From Entomortierella parvispora E1425 (lineage: Eukaryota; Fungi; Mortierellomycota): a DNA stretch of 64,000 bases. Of the stretch, positions 35,310-49,871 are shown piece after piece. The first letter of the stretch is position 1, and each line of letters starts with the position of its first letter. The translations under genes and the position numbers were made by a program. The notes under the pieces are model-generated. The model saw only the letters and a list, made by a program, of their open reading frames with translations, had not been told where the DNA came from and ran no database searches. The stretch is from NCBI GenBank assembly GCA_020891255.1, contig BQFW01000007.1:1426001-1490000 (forward strand), in the 5' to 3' direction.

Positions 35310-35819
35310 GAAAATACTGCAGGTGGTCCGTTTGAAGAGAGGAATGAGGAAATGAGGAGAGTGAATGAGGCGAATGAGAGAACGAAAGAAAAGAAAAAAA
35401 AAAAGAAAGATAGATTCTTCCAAAGACACCTTATCCAGGAAATCACTCATCTGGGCGGGGCTCTCAAAGCCGCTTTTGCCCCGGGTCGGTCTGAACTGGG
35501 TAGAGCGCACACAAGGTGGCCAATATGAGCATTGCACAGAGTTCTTCATTTGGAGCTGCTCGTTGCAGGGTGGAAGACAACAGCCCTCACTCGGGTCCTG
35601 CATGTCTTCCGCGTCGGGAAACCACAGCCCTGGTCCCTGGTTTGTAAACTGATCGCCCCTCGGTTCTGGATACCGTCATCGCTCCAGCACTCAAATATTG
35701 TGATTGTTGTTCTGACCCACCTTCCTAGCCATGGTCCCATCGATATCTTGAACTTTTCCGTGGCTTAGGACAGCAAGGTCATGTGACCCAATCGGAACCA
35801 AACCAACAACAGGTTACGG

Positions 35820-36630
35820 GAGGTATTCATTTTAGGTATCACCCCCCAGGTATCAGCCAGGTATCATGATACCTGTGACGTCATACCGTTGCATTGAAGT
35901 TTGCTGCCACGTGACACACGTGACTGATCCCGATATACTGTATCCCTTTCCTCCAAATACATCTGCATCTCGCCTCACATCTTCCACCTCCATTGCTGCC
36001 TCTCAAGAACCCCTATCCAATTCATTACCTTCTCGTTCTCGATCGTTATCGTTGTCTAGTACGGGCTCATGGTCTCCTCCACACAGTCCCGCTGAACCAA
36101 TTGGTCTTTATAACTCCCTGTCATCTGGATCGGACGATGAAGACTTCCGCGAAGAGGCTAATACTGTTACTCCAAGCACAAACAAGAGAGCGAGGAGAAC
36201 CATTCCTTTTGGCTTGACTGTGGATAATGTTGCAGCGTTTGGAAGATTACCGACGTGTGGCGCGTGCGAATCAGTACTTGAAAGGAATGAGCAGCGTTTT
36301 ATTTTGAAAGTCAAGACAAGCGAGGAGCGCGGCTTTAGTAGTGTAATCTCTTATCACTTCGCCGATGCCTGCATTCAAAAACTGGATGATCAATGGAGAG
36401 CTGAGGCACAGAACTACCTAGCAGCTTTAGAGTAGGAATTCGAACAATAAAAAAAAAAAAAAAAAAAAAACGCGAGCCACACGCGGACTGGACGCGGTGA
36501 AGCCTCGGACGCGGTGAGGCGGATAAAATGACTGGTCATGTGATGAATTCGTTCCATTCCACGGTATGACGTCACAGGTATCATGATACCTGGCTGATAC
36601 CTTGGGGATGATACCTAAATCTCAAGCCTC
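35820..36630. mobile_element. Non-autonomous Mutator-like (MULE) DNA transposon, 811 bp, carrying an ORF
   Basis: TIRs 35820-35889 and 36561-36630 match at 62/70 positions (57/59 in the inner part), with GAGG...CCTC termini. Flanks CAGGTTACGG (35810-35819) and CAAGTTACGG (36631-36640) form a 10-bp TSD with 1 mismatch. Confidence 0.82.
35866..36435 (+). CDS. 189-aa ORF inside the MULE with a C-terminal PARP-type zinc-finger-like motif
   Basis: CGAC-x29-HFADAC, a Ser-rich linker, acidic DDEDF and basic KRARR. The only ATG lies inside the left TIR; A22 at 36449-36470 follows the stop. Confidence 0.5.
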   Translation: MIPVTSYRCIEVCCHVTHVTDPDILYPFPPNTSASRLTSSTSIAASQEPLSNSLPSRSRSLSLSSTGSWSPPHSPAEPIGLYNSLSSGSDDEDFREEANTVTPSTNKRARRTIPFGLTVDNVAAFGRLPTCGACESVLERNEQRFILKVKTSEERGFSSVISYHFADACIQKLDDQWRAEAQNYLAALE

Positions 36631-36988
36631 CAAGTTACGGTGTGGGGCCGGCCATCAACAGTGCTGGCGCACTCACGTGATATACAGAAATCATTTAAGA
36701 GAAGAAGAGAGGCTGCAAAGCTTTCCTCTCTCTTTCCTCTCTCTTTCCTCTATCCCTTCACCTCCTTCACCTCCAACACAGCCCTTCACTCCCTCCCCTC
36801 TGATCAGCAAACTCCTGTAAGGATTGCAGATAACCGTTTGTCTTATCCTATCAAGATTAGTCAACAGAAGAAAAAATTTTCTGCTGTTGAATCGAACCTG
36901 ATCAGTGTTGACATTCGCGCGATCTGCAATCTCGAGATTCGGGAGATCTGACCCAGAGAGACTTCTTGATATCTCGCAAGCTACTATG

Positions 36989-40845: not shown

Positions 40846-43800
40846 TTAAGGATGAGTGATCTCGGAATCGTCTTGGGTAGTGTCGTTGTTCTGGTCCTTG
40901 CAGCCATTGTCGTTGGCTTGGGCCTCCTGTGGGGCCGCGGATGGAGTTGACGAAGCTGAGGTTCGGGAGTGGCGGGTCATGACGACGGGTCGGCCACCCA
41001 AGAACAACAGCACCGGTTCAGAATCCTCCTCCGTACGGCCAGTCTGAACTCCAGCCCGCTCGACGGCCTCCCGGAGAAGTGTCCGGGTGCCGTCCTCCCC
41101 CTGGCTGACGCAGTCTCGACCGACTACCTCAGCCTCGTCGCCGCTCCCACGGGCGACTACCACCTCGTTGCACGAGGAGGCCTCGGCAAGGAGGCTTACG
41201 TGCTGGAGGGGGTGGTTGCGAGTGGCAACTACGACGGGAGGGTCTCCCTGATGGCCAAGAACGTCGACCGCAGTCGTGTCCCTAACGTTCAGTAGAGAAC
41301 CCGGGGGATGGCTGCTTACGTCCATCAGGCCCGTTGCTTGGATGTTGTTTCGCAGTATCCCAGAGCTGCCCCGGAGGGGCATCGTTTGGGTGTCGCTCTT
41401 CGTCGAGGGCAATAGTGTTTGTAGTTCTACCACCTCGCGCAAAGGCCCAATATTCGGGCGTCTGGTGGCAAGATCATGGATCTTGGAAGAGGAGGAGGAC
41501 GCATTGGCGCCAAAGTCCTCCCATTCAAAGTCCATCCTCTGATGGTGGTCGCTTGTCTTCGTGGTCGAAACCTTGCCGTGGGTGGTTGTATCCAAAGAAG
41601 AAGAGTCCTCAGACCAGACCAGGGCCCTGCTGCCGTGGTTGTTGATCTCGGCAGAACTCAAAAGGTCCACCATGGACTTGAGGCCCAGGCGTTGAGCCAG
41701 GGCCAGAGCCGAAAGTCCGTTCTTGTCACGAAGCTTCAAGTCAACGCCACGTAGAATCAAGTCCCGAACCAGGGATTCATATTGTAGTGCGACCGAGAGG
41801 TGTAGCATCGTGTGGCCAGTCTCGTTCGTGATATCAAGACCCTCCTTGGACTTCATCACGATGGGGGACGACGTCGAGGAGACCATAGAATCGTCTACGA
41901 GCTTGAACGATTCTAGGACCATCTTCTCCAGGTTAGAGAACGATACAGGCTTGGGCATCGGGGTCGATGACGAGGAAGCACTGGTAGAAGAGTACGTGCC
42001 CTCCAAGAGGTCGTTCCAGAGGGTAAACTCGTTGGCGCGGCTCAAGACCGAGTCCAAGGGTCCATCGAGACGGGCCGAGATGGACATCAAACGCTGCAGA
42101 GCCAACTTGATGAGCTCTTTCTCGTTATCGTCCACATAGGTGTACGAGGCTTGGGCAGGGACAGTGGTTGGAACGGTGGTGTGCAAGGCAAAGACAGAAA
42201 CAGTCTCGGCCTTGGCTGCCGCGGGGGTGAAGCACTCGAGCATGTGGTCGCGCTGAGGGATAATGGGCACAAAGGTCTGACCAAAGCAGACATACATCAT
42301 CTCTCCGACAGTGAATCCGGAACCATGGATAGTGACCAAGGTTCCTCCTCGTGTGGGACCAGAGCTGGGCGTCAAGTGGGTAATGGCAGCTGTTTGAGGC
42401 TCTTGATGCTGAGGCTGGATCTGCTGCTGGACTTGGTGCTGAGGAGAGGGAGTTTCCTCAGTCAACTCAGGAAAGAGAGATATCATTGGGTCGGGAGGGG
42501 CGTGAGACATGTAAGATACGTCAGGACTACTGTCCATGAAGTCATCTAAATCGCGCTGGGACGGATAGTCGATGGGCGAGTTCAACTGCGACCCTGGAGG
42601 AGTAGGGAACTGATGCTGAGGTCTTGATCCCAAGGGACTTCCAGATTCGGATCGCTCTGATCGCTCACGTTTGGATTTGGACGTTGAAGATTTGACAACA
42701 TTACGAGGACTGGAAGAAGCGCGTTGCAGTTTTTGTTGCTTCTTCAGCTCTTGCTGCTGCAGCTTCAGTTGCAGCTGCTCGGCCTTGGCAGCGGCCTTGG
42801 CAGCAGCGGCGGCGGCTCTGGACGCGATTCTGTTCTTGTTTTGATGGTAGAACATCAACGGCAAGGTGACATGGGACGCGATGGAAGCATCCGACAAGGA
42901 ATCGAATCGAATCACGAACCCCTCCTTCTCCTTCTTGTGCCCACAGTAGCAGTTGACCTTGAACTGGATGTTGGCGACACCCGAACGGAAGCTGATCAAT
43001 GCATCCCCATCCTCGGTGCGGTGCAACTCGGGCAACAAATGCAAGATCTATGGGAGAAGAAAAACATGTCCTCGGTCAAGATTGGTATTGCTCAATTGAC
43101 AACAAAAAAAAAAAAAAAAAAAAAAGAAACTCGCAACTTACACGACTCTCAGTCTGCTCCAACTTGGCAGACATGCGCTTGGCACAGCGCAAACAGGCCT
43201 CGGTCTCCTCCTGCCAGTTATTAGAGGGGCACTGGAGGATGGTGGAGAGGTTCAAAATGTTCTTTGTCGCCATTTCTTCCTCAGACATGACCTTGTCAGC
43301 CTGGGCAAAGAACAAGTCCTTGGGCAAACGAGCGTAGTCGTAGGTCTTGAGCACCGAACCGTCTTCCTGACTGACGATCGAGAGTTCGACATAGATGATG
43401 GTCTCAATACGAAGTCGATCCTCGATCTGGGTGGGGACATACTCCTGGAGCTCCTTCTTGAAGACATGAGTCTTCACATTCAAACGATGCGAGGTCGCGG
43501 GCTTGGAGTAGCTGCTTTACAGAGTGATGAAGAGGAGCGAGTTTTAGGGCCTGTGCTGATCTGAGCCAGATATCGTCCAAGGATTACCTCTCCAGGGAGC
43601 CATCGACAGAGTACAGCTGAGCGCTGTTCCACTCCGGGGTGGCAAGCTGAGCCTTGCGCGAGTCGCCCATGCGGATGGCGGAAGACTAATTTTTTTTTTT
43701 TTTTTTTTTTTGGCACACAGGAGAAAAAAAGTGTCCGGTCAGCTCAGCTCTCAAAGAAGCTCGGAAAGGAAAGGACGCTTTAATCGTCTGCTGGTGTATC

Positions 43801-43922: not shown

Positions 43923-46900
43923 GGTTGGAGTGTGGTTGGAAGTTGCTTAAGTGTTTGGAGGGTGCGTTTGTTGGGTTGCTTTTGGCGTGTAGCTAGCGAG
44001 GTTGCGATGCAGATGCAGAGTGGAGGTAATTGGGGATGGGAAGGATGGGATTGGGATCAGATATCCATTCAGAAGCCGATGAGGGGAGAGATTGTAGGTA
44101 GGGATGAAGCGGATGCAGCAAAGAAGGCAAAGAAGGAAAGAAAGAGAAAGAGAGAAAGGCACTGAAGAAGGTATCCGCTGTCATCCTGCTCCCGCGCTCT
44201 GGCTGCATGCGCCCAAACCGATTGGAGCAACTTTTGGCTGTTTTTCATGGCCAGCAGACATGAGCCCTCTCGAGGCCCAATCGTCGTTCCTGGGTTGAAT
44301 TGGGGTCGTCCCTGTGCCCGACAGAGTTGCGAAGGGAGCGGGTTTTCATCTTGATTTTTTTGCTCCAATTGATCACGTACACGCGGGCATTCACGTACAC
44401 ACATTTGTGGCTCCCATGGCCCAGTCACACACACGCCGCCGCGCTTTTTTGCACATGAAGATAGGAAGATAGGGGCAGGATGGTTGGTTCTTCATACTCA
44501 TATTGTTCGGATGCTGTACCCCAGCCCGTCTCTAGGAGTGAGGGAGCGCACCCATCATCTCTCTTACAAGGAACCAGCTGGGGAGCAAGCCTGTGGAAGC
44601 TGGCACCCGGGGAAACGAGTATCCTGTTCTGTGCCAAAATAGAAATAGGCCAATAGGCCAGCCACTCAGCCCTGCAGTGTGACCAATGGAATGCCCTGCC
44701 GCAGCACAAAGTGGTCCGTGCGACGACGACAGGGGTTGGACTTTCAAAAAAAGTCACAATGCGAGCGCTTCCTGGCGACCTTGGAAGGGCCACCGGAAGA
44801 CATGGGTGTGGTCGTCAGCACCATTCAAAGGATGTGCACATTGCTATGGGGGCTCTGCAGACAGTTGCGATTAGGTCGTCTCTAGAGTGAAAATGTATTT
44901 TGATGAAGGTGGTGTTACCATTTTCTCCTTGATACCCTGGCGCGTCATTCATAGAAAGCGTGTCTGAGGAATGGCAAAGGGGAGGATCTCAATGCTTAGG
45001 CAATCTGTTTCGTACGCCTGTTTTGCGACGCGCACATCACGTAAGCGCATCTCTGTCAACTTTTGGCACAGCTCGCGTTTTTTTGGGCGTCTCCTCCTGG
45101 CAAACGAGTTGCCCTCTGTCGACGACCTTTTTTTTCGTTTTCCATTTGCTCTCTTTATTTTTCGGGGGTTCTTTCTTTCTTGGGCCCTTGGCAAGTAACG
45201 TCACTTTGCTCTCATAGATACAGTTTCACCTTAACGGTGATCAGCAGGAACTGTTGGAATGTTAGGGAGTAGAGACAAGCTGACATGAGCAAAAAAATGA
45301 ACAACGTAGGTTCAGGACTCTTTTTTGTTTTGTTTCCCAGGAGGAAGGAACTGATTTAGTCTGAAAGGAACAAACAAGCAACAACGACGTTTGGGTATCC
45401 CTCTTTCCATCTTGGGCAATTCTTCTTTCTGTCTATCCTTCTTTTTCGCACTGACCGACCCCAAAAAAAAAAAAAGAAAAACCTAGAAGAAACGCGATCT
45501 TGACGCGATCTTTGGTCTTGTCCTAGTCAACGTGTTCAGAGTAGATGCCGAAAAAAGAACCATTAGTCGGATCTGCTCGGGGAAATGTTTTGGTGTGTAA
45601 CGACGTGAACAAGCTTGTGTTCCGTGTTCGCCCAAAGGCCCTCGCCCTTCATGCACGTCGGTTTGTTGTCCAATGGGTCCAAGGTCAACTCATTGCGGGA
45701 TACATTGATAAAGAAATGGGGGCATCGCACGGCATGCACACTCTATCTCTGTCTCTTTCGCCTCCTCCCTCCCTCCCTCCCCCTCTTCTCTCTCTTCTCT
45801 CTCTCTCTCTCTGTCTCCCCCTCTCCCTCCCTTTCGTTATCACTATCTTTTTGGTACTCAATCGGTAGATCCCCGTTGTAGCTCTGGAAAAATCGTGAAA
45901 CTCGAAAGGATCATCAGTGTTTGTGGACACAACATTATTCTTTTACAGTCCACTCTTTTGTTAGTTCATCAACAACAATAAATCTTAGGAGGGAGATGCG
46001 GAAGAAGGGTGCAAGACCCTCACACAAAGTGGCACGTTTGAAACGCTTTGATCGTCCCTTTGCTTTCGCCCTCTGAAAAAAAAAAATAAAAAATTCGGTT
46101 GCATGAAATATGGGTAGAAGGAAGGAAGGAGAGAGGGGTGGGAGGAAAGGAGCAGAAGAAGGAGGAAATGAGACGGACGGTCGGACAAAAGATGTGTAAG
46201 AAATAGACGAATATCTGGCTCTAGTGAAGACCAAATATCCTCGGAGAGAAGCGGCGAGTAGAAGACAACAACCATCATGAGACAGAGGAGGTGTCATCTC
46301 GGCGGCGAGCAGCTCCTCCTCCATTCTACGTGCATCCTCGTTTGAGAGTTGAAGCTGGAGTTCTTTTTATGGTAGCAAATGAGGTTATTACTCGTCCATG
46401 AGTCCACCTTTCGCGCTCTATCGCAATTTAGACCCCGTGCGATCTGTGGATCCCTGCCTCCCTCCGTTTTTTTTTTTTTTTTTTTTTTTTTTTTGTTGTC
46501 TTATTTCTACTCTGTGTCCGGATGGTGGGCCTTCTTTCTGCACCCGACGTACCGGATTTTGCAGATCTCCAGTGGGTCAAAACACACAAGTCGCTCAACG
46601 AAAGTCAATTACGTCGCATTCAGTCGTTTGATTCACCGCGGTACGAGTTCAGTACGTCTGAGTGGACCCTAGAAATATGGATTGTCACTCTGTCTGTACT
46701 CTGATGGATAGAGCCAGTCCATCAAGGCGTTCATGGCGTATGAGCGTGCGAGTGCTCTGCATCTTCTTGGAACGGCAACCACAGATCTTCACCATATCTG
46801 TGAGAATTTGGGAGGTTGTTATCTGGGGAAACATCAACAACATGATGAGGAGACAGATGCAGGCTGTGTGCAATGGAGGAGACAATAGAAGAGTGAACGA

Positions 46901-47570: not shown

Positions 47571-47601
<31 letters not shown>

Positions 47602-49871
47602 AGGACGCAAAGAGATGCAGAAAAATGACCGCTGAATACTCACTGCCCTTTCGGTCTTGCAACAATATTTGTCCAACCATGGCCCAGCGAGCCGATTGAT
47701 TTGTTTGAATTGAAATTGATTGAGGAGAACATGTTTTCTACCGTCCATTACAACAAAAAAAAACTCGGTTGCTTGAGAGGAGAAGGGGAAGAAAAGAGGG
47801 GTGCGGGTTTACAGAGGACAAAAAACACAACAAACAACAGACAGGGCAGTTGTCTTGTTCGAACAGCACTTTTTTCTCTGATCTTCCGGCGAGGACGTGC
47901 AGTTCGACGGACGATGGATCAAAGGAGGTTCTCTGCAGATTATCCACTGGAGTGAGGAACTTGAGATACCTTGCATGCACCGTACGATCTCCCTCTCAAA
48001 AGGGACATGGAGATTCAAGACGCGGCGAGATGGTCGTCGTGTTTGTCTTGATGGCACAGGGCGACAAACACAGTGTTGATGCAGGAAAAGAGGACGAGAG
48101 CTGGGCGGTGGATGGTCCATGCTCCCATTCAATCAAGATGCTCAGTATTATTTCAGTTCTTACTCCACTGTGCAGTAAGTTTCCGTGCAGCATTTGAAAA
48201 AAACACAAAGAGAGCGCTCCTCTCCATGCTTTACTTCGGCAGTTTTTTCGACACTTTTTTTTTCTCTCACTTTTATCTGTCTTTTGCTCTCCTCTGTCTT
48301 TCCTCCCTGTTTCTCTCTCTTTCTTTCTCTTTCTCTGCTCGCCGGCGACTCTTATTCTCTTTGCCCTACAGCGAGGCACTCTCACTTCACCATCCTGCTG
48401 CTCGTCTACAAGTAATTGTCGTTGTTGTTGTGTCTGCTCCTATCATTTTGAGTGGTGTGTGGTTGGTTGAAGTTAGGACAACAATTCAATTTTTGTTTTT
48501 TGTTTCCAGGAACAAACAGAGAGTTCTGTGACCAGGTTACCGGTTTTCCTTCAGATCGCCCTCTTTTCTATCGGTTGTTGTCTCCCTTCTCACTCTGTCC
48601 CATCCCTCATCCCTGCCCCTCCTCCTACCGAGCACTGATTCCTAACTTGGCCCCCGTTCCCATTCCAACCAGAGTCCTCAACGTCAAGGCCAAGAGTCCT
48701 GGTGAATCCTTTCTTGTTCCTGCTTCTTCTCTTCATCTCTCTCTTTCCCACTCTTTCTCTCTCTTCCATTTCACATTTTCAGCCTCGATATCAGCCTCGA
48801 TATCAGCCTCTCTTCTCCGCATCTGCCCAGACTGGCATCATTGTGTTTACGCCCCAAAGCTTATCGCGCTGTAAGTTTCTTCTCTCTCTCCCTTCTTTCA
48901 CTCTCTCTCATTCTCGCTCTCATACGATCTCTACCCATCGTCCATCTTCTACTCTCGTGTCCCCGTCTCCTCCGTCACATCAATCTGCCCTTCGTCCTTC
49001 ACCCATGGACCTATCCATGGCTCACGGTCAATCACGCTCCAGCTCGAGCTATCGCGCCCCCTTAGACCGTTTTGACTAGGATCTATCCTGTGGTTCTCTG
49101 TCTGCAGAAACTCGCTCAGAAAAAAAAAAAAAAAAGCACACACCACAACGCGCTCACTGGGTTTGATTGCTACTCGTCTCCTTTCTCCGTTTCCCCATTG
49201 AATATCAGCAGACTCCACAGGAAACTGAGAGAAGAGAGAGCGGTTTCTCCCTGCCTTCGCACGCACTCCTCCATCCTCCTCCCTCTCTGTAGGAGGTTTA
49301 TATTGTTCTTTGTCATCAGCCTGCTGACTTGAACCTATTTTTGAACGTTGTTCGTGATTCTGGTTTACAGTACTTCCACAGCAAACCCCTGATCTTGAAC
49401 CAGCTTCTTTGGCATACCATCGTCAATTTCTTTTCAAAACCAGGCAAGTGAATTATCCGAACTAAAAAAAAAGTTTGTAACCCGTTTCTACCTTCAGGTG
49501 TGAACATGGAAGCGAAAGAGAGCAACGCAACACACGAGGAGGTAGAGTCCCGCTTTTAACACGCTCAGTCATTCTTTTGATTTCATGCCTCAACTAGACT
49601 CGACTGTCCTTTTCCTCTGTCCAACAAACACCCGCAGGCCTGCCCCGTGCGACGATACCTGCACAACAGGTGCAAGCTCCCGAGACATATCTGCGAGGAT
49701 CAGCATTGCTTTTTCAGCCTAATACACATCCCCTGGAATTTGGTTGAAGAAGGGGAAAAAAAGAGAGAGAGAGCGAGCGTGCGTGCGTGAGTGAAAACGT
49801 TCCTGCGGTGTCGCGTCAGGGTTTTCCCCCCCCTCTGTAAAACACATCAAAACACTCGCCTGCCAAGTACT

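What the first reader, a model, noticed from the sequence alone, without database searches (positions are those of the whole stretch)
35810..36640. Pack-MULE-like element with 70-bp TIRs and a 10-bp TSD
Seen: 62/70 TIR identity, GAGG...CCTC ends, and flanking CAGGTTACGG / CAAGTTACGG. Established: long TIRs with a 9-11-bp TSD are diagnostic of Mutator elements, and non-autonomous copies carrying host gene fragments (Pack-MULEs) are well known in plants. Here the 671-bp interior has no transposase but holds a protein-like ORF. That makes it a candidate gene-capturing MULE in an early-diverging fungus, inserted between a receptor-like gene and a snoRNA host.
Basis: partly seen in the sequence, partly recalled or inferred. 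Interest (0 to 1): 0.75.

Follow-up and report, generated by a model that had tools for sequence, protein, structure and literature searches.

The report
Solo mini-Mutator transposon keeping a zinc finger
This is a real but solitary, old, non-autonomous Mutator-type jumping gene in the soil fungus Entomortierella parvispora; its small open reading frame is not a captured host gene but the leftover DNA-break-type (PARP-like) zinc-finger tail of the transposase of its own transposon lineage.

Summary
Arms 35831-35898 and 36552-36619 form a 68-nt, 93% inverted repeat. It is the only inverted repeat of 35 nt or more in the 64-kb window that is not made largely of a homopolymer run. The ends are GAGG...CCTC and the flanks are CAGGTTACGG/CAAGTTACGG.

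The Mutator reading is supported. In the same genome, two large young transposon families (A, 9.3 kb; B, 8.7 kb) and one small sibling element have perfect 9-bp target duplications. All share the terminal signature G-R-G-K, five variable bases, [G/C]ATTT.

The Pack-MULE (host gene capture) reading is not supported:
- ORF residues about 100-188 form a PARP-type zinc finger, 29-41% identical to the C-terminal domain of the family A/B transposases and their metagenomic relatives.
- Those transposases combine a GCM/WRKY-like finger, an IS256/Mutator-like DDE core, a USP-like domain (by eye only) and this finger.
- Residues 1-99 match nothing, and no parental host gene exists in the genome.

At least two other small element lineages here have the same layout: TIR, small zinc-finger ORF, homopolymer run, TIR. 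The element is single-copy with no partner sharing its TIRs, so it is most likely an immobile deletion-derivative relic. Earlier notes of this scan had already seen the large family on other DNA.

The parts
35810..35819 (.). left target-site duplication CAGGTTACGG
   Evidence: Read directly. It matches 36631-36640 at 9/10; P about 3e-5 at a fixed register.
35820..35898 (+). Left TIR. The terminal 11 nt are GAGGTATTCAT. A 68-nt arm follows with four GGTATCA units, the palindrome CAGGTATCATGATACCTG and TGACGTCA.
   Evidence: The terminal signature G-R-G-K-N5-[GC]ATTT is shared with families A and B and with L039.
35866..36435 (+). 189-codon ORF. Its only ATG lies in the TIR palindrome. Residues 1-99 are Ser/Pro-rich and match nothing.
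   Evidence: The ORF is annotated as a protein in NCBI/UniRef for this assembly.
36184..36420 (+). PARP-type zinc finger (residues 107-185; C-x2-C-x29-H-x4-C), homologous to the C-terminal domain of the clade's transposases
   Evidence: Alignment A1; profile against PDB gives the PARP1 fingers at E 4e-4. The AF2 model has pLDDT 83. Nearly all of the first 28 Foldseek ranks, and every row listed among them, are PARP1 or Lig3 zinc fingers. BLASTP to family A/B proteins gives E 1e-11 to 2e-16.
36446..36470 (+). AATAAA followed by a 22-nt A run, starting 11 nt after the stop codon
   Evidence: Siblings have a homopolymer run at the same place: T in L039/L040, A in L043. It is therefore not a retrocopy tail.
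36471..36530 (+). subterminal ACGCGAG / GGACGCGGTGA[AG]GC repeats
   Evidence: Direct repeat D5. (G)ACGCG repeats lie at the same place in L043 and L039/L040.
36552..36630 (-). Right TIR. Read inward, the terminal 11 nt are GAGGCTTGAGA.
36631..36640 (.). right target-site duplication CAAGTTACGG

Best explanation
The element at 35820-36630 is a solitary, fairly old, non-autonomous member of a Mutator-superfamily clade of Mortierellaceae. The autonomous transposases of that clade combine an N-terminal GCM/WRKY-like zinc finger, an IS256/MULE-type DDE core, a USP-like cysteine-peptidase-like region (seen by eye only) and a C-terminal PARP-type zinc finger. The element has the layout of an internal-deletion derivative. 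It keeps both ends and the last ~90 recognisable codons of the transposase gene (the zinc finger), the stop codon, the homopolymer run and the 3' subterminal repeats. It has lost the catalytic part. An ATG inside the left TIR happens to open the frame. Shown: the TIRs, the TSD, the shared termini, the homology and fold of the domain, single-copy status, and the lack of a host parent. Inferred: the element arrived by cut-and-paste using a transposase supplied in trans. That transposase came from a lineage with no full-length copy left in this genome, so the element is now immobile. Whether the ORF is expressed is unknown. If it is, it would make a small protein that binds DNA ends or nicks.
For: TIR and TSD.
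Single copy: BLAST of the whole element and a 30-mer pattern with up to 3 mismatches find only the element itself.
Domain in the genome: it recurs at about 20 loci. Nine lie at the C-terminus of the transposase ORFs of family A (5 copies) and family B (4 copies).
Families A and B: perfect 9-bp TSDs (ATAAAAAAC, ACAGTTTAT, ATATATCAG) and TIRs of 74-155 nt.
Small sibling L039: perfect 9-bp TSD CAAACAAAC.
Termini in register: GAGGTATTCATTT and GAGGCTTGAGATTT (ours); GGGTCACACGATTT and GGGTGTATAGATTT (A); GGGTATATCGAATTT (B); GAGTGAACAGATTT and GGGTAGACACATTT (L039).
Transposase class: the A2 profile hits the mouse GCM1 DNA-binding domain at E 3e-6. D, D, C..H and E (in TNAQE) are invariant across 10 homologues. 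The AF2 core is closest to the ISCth4 (IS256 family) transposase at E 1e-6, against Hermes at 1e-2.
PARP-type finger. UniRef independently names family-A fragments 'PARP-type domain-containing protein'.
The domain is always C-terminal in 200 representative proteins, which include full-length transposases of 855-1376 aa.
All seven residues invariant in the alignment (two Cys, one His, P, G, P, R) are intact in our ORF, as is the fourth zinc ligand.
Against: No autonomous element with these TIRs exists in the genome, and no second copy does, so transposition is inferred only from the TSD.
Pfam MULE (PF10551) does not hit the family A/B transposases. Their Mutator assignment rests on fold, motifs, TSD and the GCM finger.
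The ORF is intact although the TIRs have diverged by about 7%, and its start codon sits in the TIR. A second small lineage (L039) shows the same. This may mean the ORF is kept for a function rather than being a passive remnant.
The deletion junction cannot be mapped, because residues 1-99 match nothing once composition is corrected for.
Confidence: 0.75

Rival explanations
1. Kept, functional mini-gene. The small zinc-finger ORF is expressed from the TIR or the upstream flank. It is maintained either by the host (domestication) or by the element lineage. In the second case it would act as a trans regulator or competitor of the clade's transposases, much as truncated P-element repressors do.
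For: The ORF is intact, with all zinc ligands and invariant residues. The same TIR-ORF-homopolymer-TIR layout recurs in at least two other lineages with unrelated TIR sequences. These are L039/L040, and L043, whose termini and TSD could not be fixed. In L039 the ORF also starts at an ATG in the TIR. Within the L039 family the zinc-finger codons show dN/dS of 0.15: 12 synonymous against 7 non-synonymous changes, Fisher p 8e-5. Coding identity is 93% while the adjacent non-coding end is about 75% identical. All six small-element ORFs of the genome fall in one group of the domain tree (SH-aLRT 94, quick tree).
Against: L039 and L041 do not share a 5' junction. Their low dN/dS may therefore date from when the sequence was still part of working transposases. 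Two of the four L039-family copies are disrupted. The tree group also holds long transposase-linked proteins (P0016 cluster with 1215-aa members; P0003), so independent deletions are equally compatible. No expression data were available. L043's frame has no ATG ahead of the finger.
Confidence: 0.2
2. True Pack-MULE: the interior is a fragment of a host gene picked up by a Mutator element.
For: It is a non-autonomous MULE with a coding-looking interior. Residues 1-99 are of unknown origin.
Against: Neither DNA nor protein searches of the whole genome find a parental copy. The only conserved part is homologous to the transposase C-terminus of the same clade. No long protein carrying the domain shows any other recognisable host-type family; only a weak GCM match appeared.
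Confidence: 0.04
3. The structure is not a transposon. It is a local inverted duplication, or a retrocopy (note the AATAAA and A run) sitting between chance repeats.
For: The element is single-copy. An A22 run follows the stop codon.
Against: The direct repeat matches 9/10 and abuts both ends exactly. The termini follow the clade's signature. Siblings carry a T run on the coding strand at the same place, so the run is not a poly(A) tail.
Confidence: 0.02

Closest known systems
Non-autonomous Mutator-like elements (internal-deletion derivatives such as the maize Mu elements relative to MuDR)
   Same: Long TIRs, a 9-10-bp TSD, a GAG/GGG terminus, no transposase, dependence on a transposase supplied in trans, and TIRs that may carry transcription or translation start signals.
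   Different: It is single-copy with no autonomous partner in the genome. It keeps an open reading frame for the transposase's C-terminal zinc finger, beginning at an ATG inside the TIR.
Pack-MULEs of plants
   Same: A small MULE with a coding-looking interior.
   Different: The interior is transposase-derived, not host-derived, and no parental gene exists.
The GCM/WRKY-DDE-USP-like-zfPARP Mutator elements of this genome (families A and B)
   Same: The same C-terminal PARP-type finger (29-38% identity), the same terminal signature and the same TSD class.
   Different: Families A and B are 8.7-9.3 kb, young (copies 98-99.9% identical) and carry the full transposase. Our element is 811 bp. Its finger belongs to the sister group of the domain tree, whose full-length members were seen only in metagenomes.
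PARP-type zinc fingers (PF00645; PARP1 F1/F2, DNA ligase III)
   Same: The fold, and the motif pattern [A/V]-x-x-G-x-x-P-x-C-x-x-C ... R ... Y/F-H ... C. These fingers bind DNA nicks and ends.
   Different: The ligand spacing is H-x4-C rather than H-x2-C. The score is below Pfam's threshold. The domain sits at the end of a transposase or stands alone in a mini-transposon. I found no paper pairing zf-PARP with transposable elements in the searchable library.

Membership tests
Mutator superfamily, non-autonomous element | Target-site duplication of 8-11 bp (usually 9) | tested here: met
   The 10-bp flanks match at 9/10 (or 8/9). P is about 3e-5 at the register fixed by the termini.
Mutator superfamily, non-autonomous element | Long terminal inverted repeats | tested here: met
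   A 68-nt arm at 93%, plus 11-nt termini.
Mutator superfamily, non-autonomous element | Termini related to those of elements that encode a Mutator transposase | tested here: met
   The signature G-R-G-K-N5-[GC]ATTT is shared with families A and B and with L039. The TIR bodies are otherwise unrelated.
Mutator superfamily, non-autonomous element | Evidence of mobility: several copies, an empty site, or a partner with the same TIRs | tested here: not met
   The element is single-copy and no partner exists in the genome. An empty site in other strains cannot be tested with these tools.
Pack-MULE | Interior derived from a host (non-transposon) gene with an identifiable parental copy | tested here: not met
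   There is no other DNA or protein match in the genome. The conserved part is homologous to transposase C-termini.
Mutator/MULE transposase (for the large relatives A and B) | DDE RNase-H-like core of the IS256/MULE type with a C/DxxH motif | tested here: met
   D, D, C..H and E are invariant. The five best Foldseek matches are ISCth4 (IS256) at E 1e-6, well ahead of Hermes and the integrases.
Mutator/MULE transposase (for the large relatives A and B) | Match to Pfam MULE (PF10551) or Transposase_mut (PF00872) | tested here: not met
   There is no hit at the threshold; one homologue reaches E 0.15 for PF00872. None of the 39 PF10551 loci of the genome lies in family A or B.
Mutator/MULE transposase (for the large relatives A and B) | N-terminal WRKY/GCM1-type zinc finger | tested here: met
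   The A2 profile hits mouse GCM1 (1odh) at E 3e-6 and WRKY weakly. Pfam GCM reaches E 7e-5 in one homologue.
zf-PARP (PF00645) | PARP-type zinc-finger fold with CCHC ligands | tested here: met
   The AF2 model has pLDDT 83. Nearly all of the first 28 Foldseek ranks, and every row listed among them, are PARP1 Zn1/Zn2 or the Lig3 finger, with probability 0.9-1.0. The ligands are C-x2-C-x29-H-x4-C.
zf-PARP (PF00645) | Score above Pfam's gathering threshold | tested here: not met
   Our ORF has no hit. Three relatives reach E 0.024. The A1 profile against PDB gives PARP1 at E 4e-4.

The most novel reading that the evidence does not exclude
The small elements may not be accidental deletion products. 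They could be a persistent lineage of 'mini-MULEs' whose only gene is a PARP-type zinc-finger protein translated from a start codon built into the TIR. That protein would bind transposon ends or the breaks made during excision. It would then act in trans on the clade's transposases, as a helper, hitch-hiker or repressor.
Probability: 0.15. Interest if true: 0.65.

Novelty: new member of a known kind. Interest (0 to 1): 0.33.

Why it matters
The result corrects a tempting claim. It would have been the first gene-capturing Pack-MULE in an early-diverging fungus, and it is instead a transposase-derived remnant. It also adds a small piece to a Mutator clade of Mortierellaceae whose transposase carries a DNA-break-type zinc finger and which I did not find in the searchable literature. 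The finger survives on its own in several miniature elements. That gives a simple handle for testing what the domain does, for example whether it binds TIR DNA, nicks or hairpins. As a single immobile relic, the element matters little to the genome.

Tried and rejected
1. Siblings with the same TIR. Whole-element BLAST and a 30-mer with up to 3 mismatches found only the element itself.
2. Pfam on the ORF found nothing. The word-based protein search found only the ORF itself.
3. Harbinger link. A DDE_Tnp_4 ORF lies beside one family-A copy, but it is outside the element's boundary and absent from other copies.
4. Haemagglutinin matches of the family-B protein in PDB (E about 1e-3 to 1). I rejected them as chance, because profile and fold searches both give PARP fingers.
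5. Retrocopy reading of the AATAAA and A run. Rejected because siblings carry a T run at the same position.
6. snoRNA neighbour. Rfam gives no hit.
7. Large partners for the sibling families L039 and L043. None were found.
The alignment was too diverse for the search for related loci. The single-protein metagenome scan returned only a contig-edge fragment.
The left halves of most A/B copies were therefore placed by coordinates and short loci only.
10. The TSD of L043 and of L040 could not be established.

Full report
**Observation**

Arms 35831-35898 and 36552-36619 are 68 nt long and 93% complementary. The element's ends are GAGG (35820) and CCTC (36630). They abut CAGGTTACGG (35810-35819) and CAAGTTACGG (36631-36640). 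Across the whole 64-kb window this is the only inverted repeat of 35 nt or more that is not made largely of a homopolymer run. Each arm holds four GGTATCA units, the perfect palindrome CAGGTATCATGATACCTG and a TGACGTCA site. The interior has one long ORF, 35866-36435 (189 codons). Its only methionine codon lies in the TIR palindrome. The stop codon is followed by AATAAA, a 22-nt A run and GGACGCGGTGA-type repeats.

The outer 11 nt of the two ends agree only at GAGG. That looked like decay until the relatives were read.

**Where the window comes from**

The window is contig 7 (1,426,001-1,490,000) of a 38.9-Mb, 20-contig assembly. Proteins of the large relatives are GenBank entries of Entomortierella parvispora, on contigs of exactly the lengths seen here. 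The genome paper reports 38.66 Mb in 19 contigs at 49.4% GC (PMC8759367).

**Copy number**

BLAST of the whole element, and a 30-nt core of the TIR with up to three mismatches, find only the element itself. There are no siblings with other cargo and no autonomous partner with these TIRs.

**The ORF is not host cargo**

Pfam finds nothing in the ORF, and the word-indexed protein search finds only the ORF itself. A six-frame search of the genome finds about 20 loci related to residues ~100-188.

Nine of these loci are the C-terminal ends of the long ORFs of two young repeat families.
- Family A has 5 copies of about 9.3 kb, 98-99.9% identical, for example C13:288316-297669.
- Family B has 4 copies of 8.66 kb, 99.8-99.9% identical, for example C6:30395-39056, which is L027 396-9057.
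- BLASTP of our ORF against these proteins gives 29-38% identity over 77-80 residues, with E from 1e-11 to 2e-16.

With composition correction, the similarity to every relative is confined to roughly residues 98-188. One weaker hit reaches back to residue 75. The first 99 Ser/Pro-rich residues and the interior DNA match nothing else in the genome. A Pack-MULE requires an identifiable host parent, and none exists.

**What the domain is**

An alignment of eight genomic copies (A1) has seven invariant residues: P, G, P, C, C, R and H. The pattern is [V/I]-[A/S]-x-x-G-x-x-P-x-C-x-x-C...R...[Y/F/C]-H-x4-C.

Four lines of evidence point to a PARP-type zinc finger.
- As a profile, its best matches among solved structures are the PARP1 fingers F1 and F2 (E 4e-4).
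- Three members touch Pfam zf-PARP weakly (E 0.024).
- An AlphaFold model of our copy has pLDDT 83. Nearly all of its first 28 Foldseek ranks in the PDB, and every row listed among them, are PARP1 Zn1/Zn2 or the DNA ligase III finger, with probability 0.9-1.0.
- The Atlas's own model has zf-PARP neighbours, and UniRef calls family-A fragments 'PARP-type domain-containing protein'.

The assignment is solid at fold level and weak at sequence level. The last ligand spacing is H-x4-C, whereas PARP1 has H-x2-C.

**What the large relatives are**

An exhaustive profile search finds 200 representative proteins with this domain, always at the C-terminus. The long ones (855-1376 aa) align with family B over their whole length.

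Their architecture, from N- to C-terminus, is as follows.
- A cysteine/histidine-rich domain whose profile hits the mouse GCM1 DNA-binding domain (E 3e-6) and WRKY weakly.
- A core with invariant D, D, C..H and E (in TNAQE).
- A region with USP/UCH-like Cys and His boxes. I read this by eye and did not test it.
- The PARP-type finger.

Pfam's MULE models do not hit them, and none of the genome's 39 PF10551 loci lies in family A or B. However, an AlphaFold model of the core (pLDDT 78) is closest to the IS256-family ISCth4 transposase (five chains, E from 1e-6 to 1e-4). It is far from hAT Hermes (E 1e-2) and the retroviral integrases. IS256 is the prokaryotic branch of the Mutator superfamily; that statement rests on established knowledge.

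Both families make perfect 9-bp target duplications: ATAAAAAAC and ACAGTTTAT in two family-A copies, and ATATATCAG in family B. I therefore accept them as divergent Mutator elements. Earlier notes of this scan reached the same reading on other DNA, and I tested it independently here.

**Link between our element and that clade**

Read inward and in register, the termini are:
- ours: GAGGTATTCATTT and GAGGCTTGAGATTT
- family A: GGGTCACACGATTT and GGGTGTATAGATTT
- family B: GGGTATATCGAATTT
- small sibling L039: GAGTGAACAGATTT and GGGTAGACACATTT

All follow G-R-G-K, five variable bases, then [G/C]ATTT; family B has one extra base before the ATTT. In family A, in L039 and in ours, the variable bases differ between the two ends of one element. 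The 'degenerate' outer 11 nt are thus a family trait. This fixes the true ends, and with them the register of the TSD (chance of 9 or more matches in 10 is 3e-5).

The 3' TIRs of ours, L043 and L039/L040 also share an invariant TGAC[G/T]TCA (alignment A3). It could be the binding site of the WRKY/GCM-type finger or a promoter element. That is speculation.

**Sibling mini-elements**

At least two other small lineages in the genome have the same layout.
- L039 (C1, 610 bp) has about 72-nt TIRs and a perfect 9-bp TSD, CAAACAAAC. Its 137-codon ORF also starts at an ATG in the TIR. It has three relatives, of which L040 also carries 105-nt TIRs.
- L043 (C1, 807 bp) has 115-nt TIRs. Its termini and TSD could not be fixed.
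- Two further small ORFs (L041, L042) have no detectable TIRs.

In the TIR-flanked elements the ORF reads towards one TIR. It ends in the zinc finger and is followed by a homopolymer run and (G)ACGCG repeats. The run is A in ours and L043 and T in L039/L040, so it is not a poly(A) tail. None has a large partner with its own TIRs.

In a quick tree of the domain, all six small-element ORFs fall in one group (SH-aLRT 94). That group also contains metagenomic proteins belonging to full-length transposases: the P0016 cluster with 1215-aa members that align with family B over 1016 residues, and P0003 as sister of the L039 family. Families A and B sit in the sister group. The tree is short (94 columns), only the quick search finished, and our sequence has a long branch.

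The simplest reading is that the small elements derive from a second lineage of the clade that has left no full-length copy in this genome. The closest relative of our finger is a partial Mortierella alpina protein, 41% identical over 87 residues.

**Relic or kept gene**

Three things argue for function.
- Our ORF is intact and keeps every invariant residue.
- Two lineages start the frame in the TIR.
- In the L039 family the finger codons show dN/dS of 0.15 (12 synonymous against 7 non-synonymous differences, Fisher p 8e-5). Coding identity is 93%, against about 75% in the adjacent non-coding end.

Four things argue against.
- L039 and L041 do not share a 5' junction, so the constraint may date from when the sequence was part of a working transposase.
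- Two of the four L039-family copies are disrupted.
- L043 has no ATG ahead of the finger.
- No expression data were available.

With about 3.5% divergence per arm, an open 189-codon frame is not improbable by chance. My rough estimate is about 0.4, and this is inference. I therefore favour a passive deletion-derivative relic (0.75) and give about 0.2 to a kept, expressed zinc-finger gene.

**Mechanism**

Shown: the structure, its homology and its insertion signature.

Inferred:
- A Mutator transposase of the clade, supplied in trans, once cut the element at the GRG termini and pasted it with a staggered 9-10-bp cut.
- Loss of that transposase lineage left the element stranded.
- If made, the 189-residue protein would bind DNA nicks or ends, as PARP-type fingers do. 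It could compete with, or assist, the related transposases.

**Comparison and novelty**

This is a new member of a known kind, a non-autonomous MULE. It is not a Pack-MULE. The unusual aspects belong to the clade: a transposase with a PARP-type finger and a USP-like region, and miniature derivatives that keep only the finger. I found no paper linking zf-PARP with transposable elements in the searchable library. That is absence in that library only.

**Limits**

- The metagenome scan was unproductive.
- No other Mortierellaceae genomes could be searched, so empty sites, orthologues and the autonomous parent remain untested.
- The neighbouring 'receptor-like gene' and 'snoRNA host' were not confirmed.

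Noticed in passing
L027 396-9057 (G000:C6:30395-39056); also C4:1005133-1013793, C4:1259296-1267963, C16:48007-56674: Family B is an 8.66-kb Mutator-type element in four copies that are 99.8-99.9% identical. It has ~155-bp TIRs and the 9-bp TSD ATATATCAG. Its 934-codon ORF combines a DDE core, USP-like Cys/His boxes and the PARP-type finger. The GCM-like exon lies just upstream (L027 5456-5809), in another frame.
   Followed up: partly
G000:C13:288316-297669 (L051 from 1492, L030 up to 6884) and four more copies on C5, C7, C10, C11: Family A is a ~9.3-kb relative with five copies and perfect 9-bp TSDs. Its two termini differ at positions 5-9. Some copies differ by a 172-bp indel (L030 2710-2881).
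   Followed up: partly
G000:C11:713408-714030, and single matches on C6, C10, C16, C18, C7: Short matches to the outer ~50 nt of family B's TIR occur here, including an inverted pair ~620 bp apart. They are probably MITE-like derivatives of family B.
   Followed up: no
G000:C5:1349193-1349275 and C5:1357059-1357093: One L043-type TIR appears split by about 7.8 kb of inserted DNA: query positions 666-748 and 749-783 lie 7.8 kb apart.
   Followed up: no
L026 6392-7426 (G000:C11:16391-17425): A PIF/Harbinger-type DDE_Tnp_4 ORF (E 6.5e-11) lies directly beside one family-A copy. Its matched part lies outside that element's boundary.
   Followed up: partly
window 36552-36619; L043 3518-3632; L039 3592-3663; L040 6336-6440: The 3' TIRs of four otherwise unrelated small elements share an invariant TGAC[G/T]TCA. 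It is a W-box/CRE-like core and could be a transposase-binding or promoter motif.
   Followed up: no
window 46454-46497 / 47577-47620 and 43690-43728: Long T and A homopolymer runs (25-30 nt) form apparent inverted pairs 1-4 kb apart. Such runs are common in this genome's intergenic DNA and explain the weaker 'inverted repeats' reported for the window.
   Followed up: no
Raw ORFs next to the element have no Pfam domain.
   Followed up: partly
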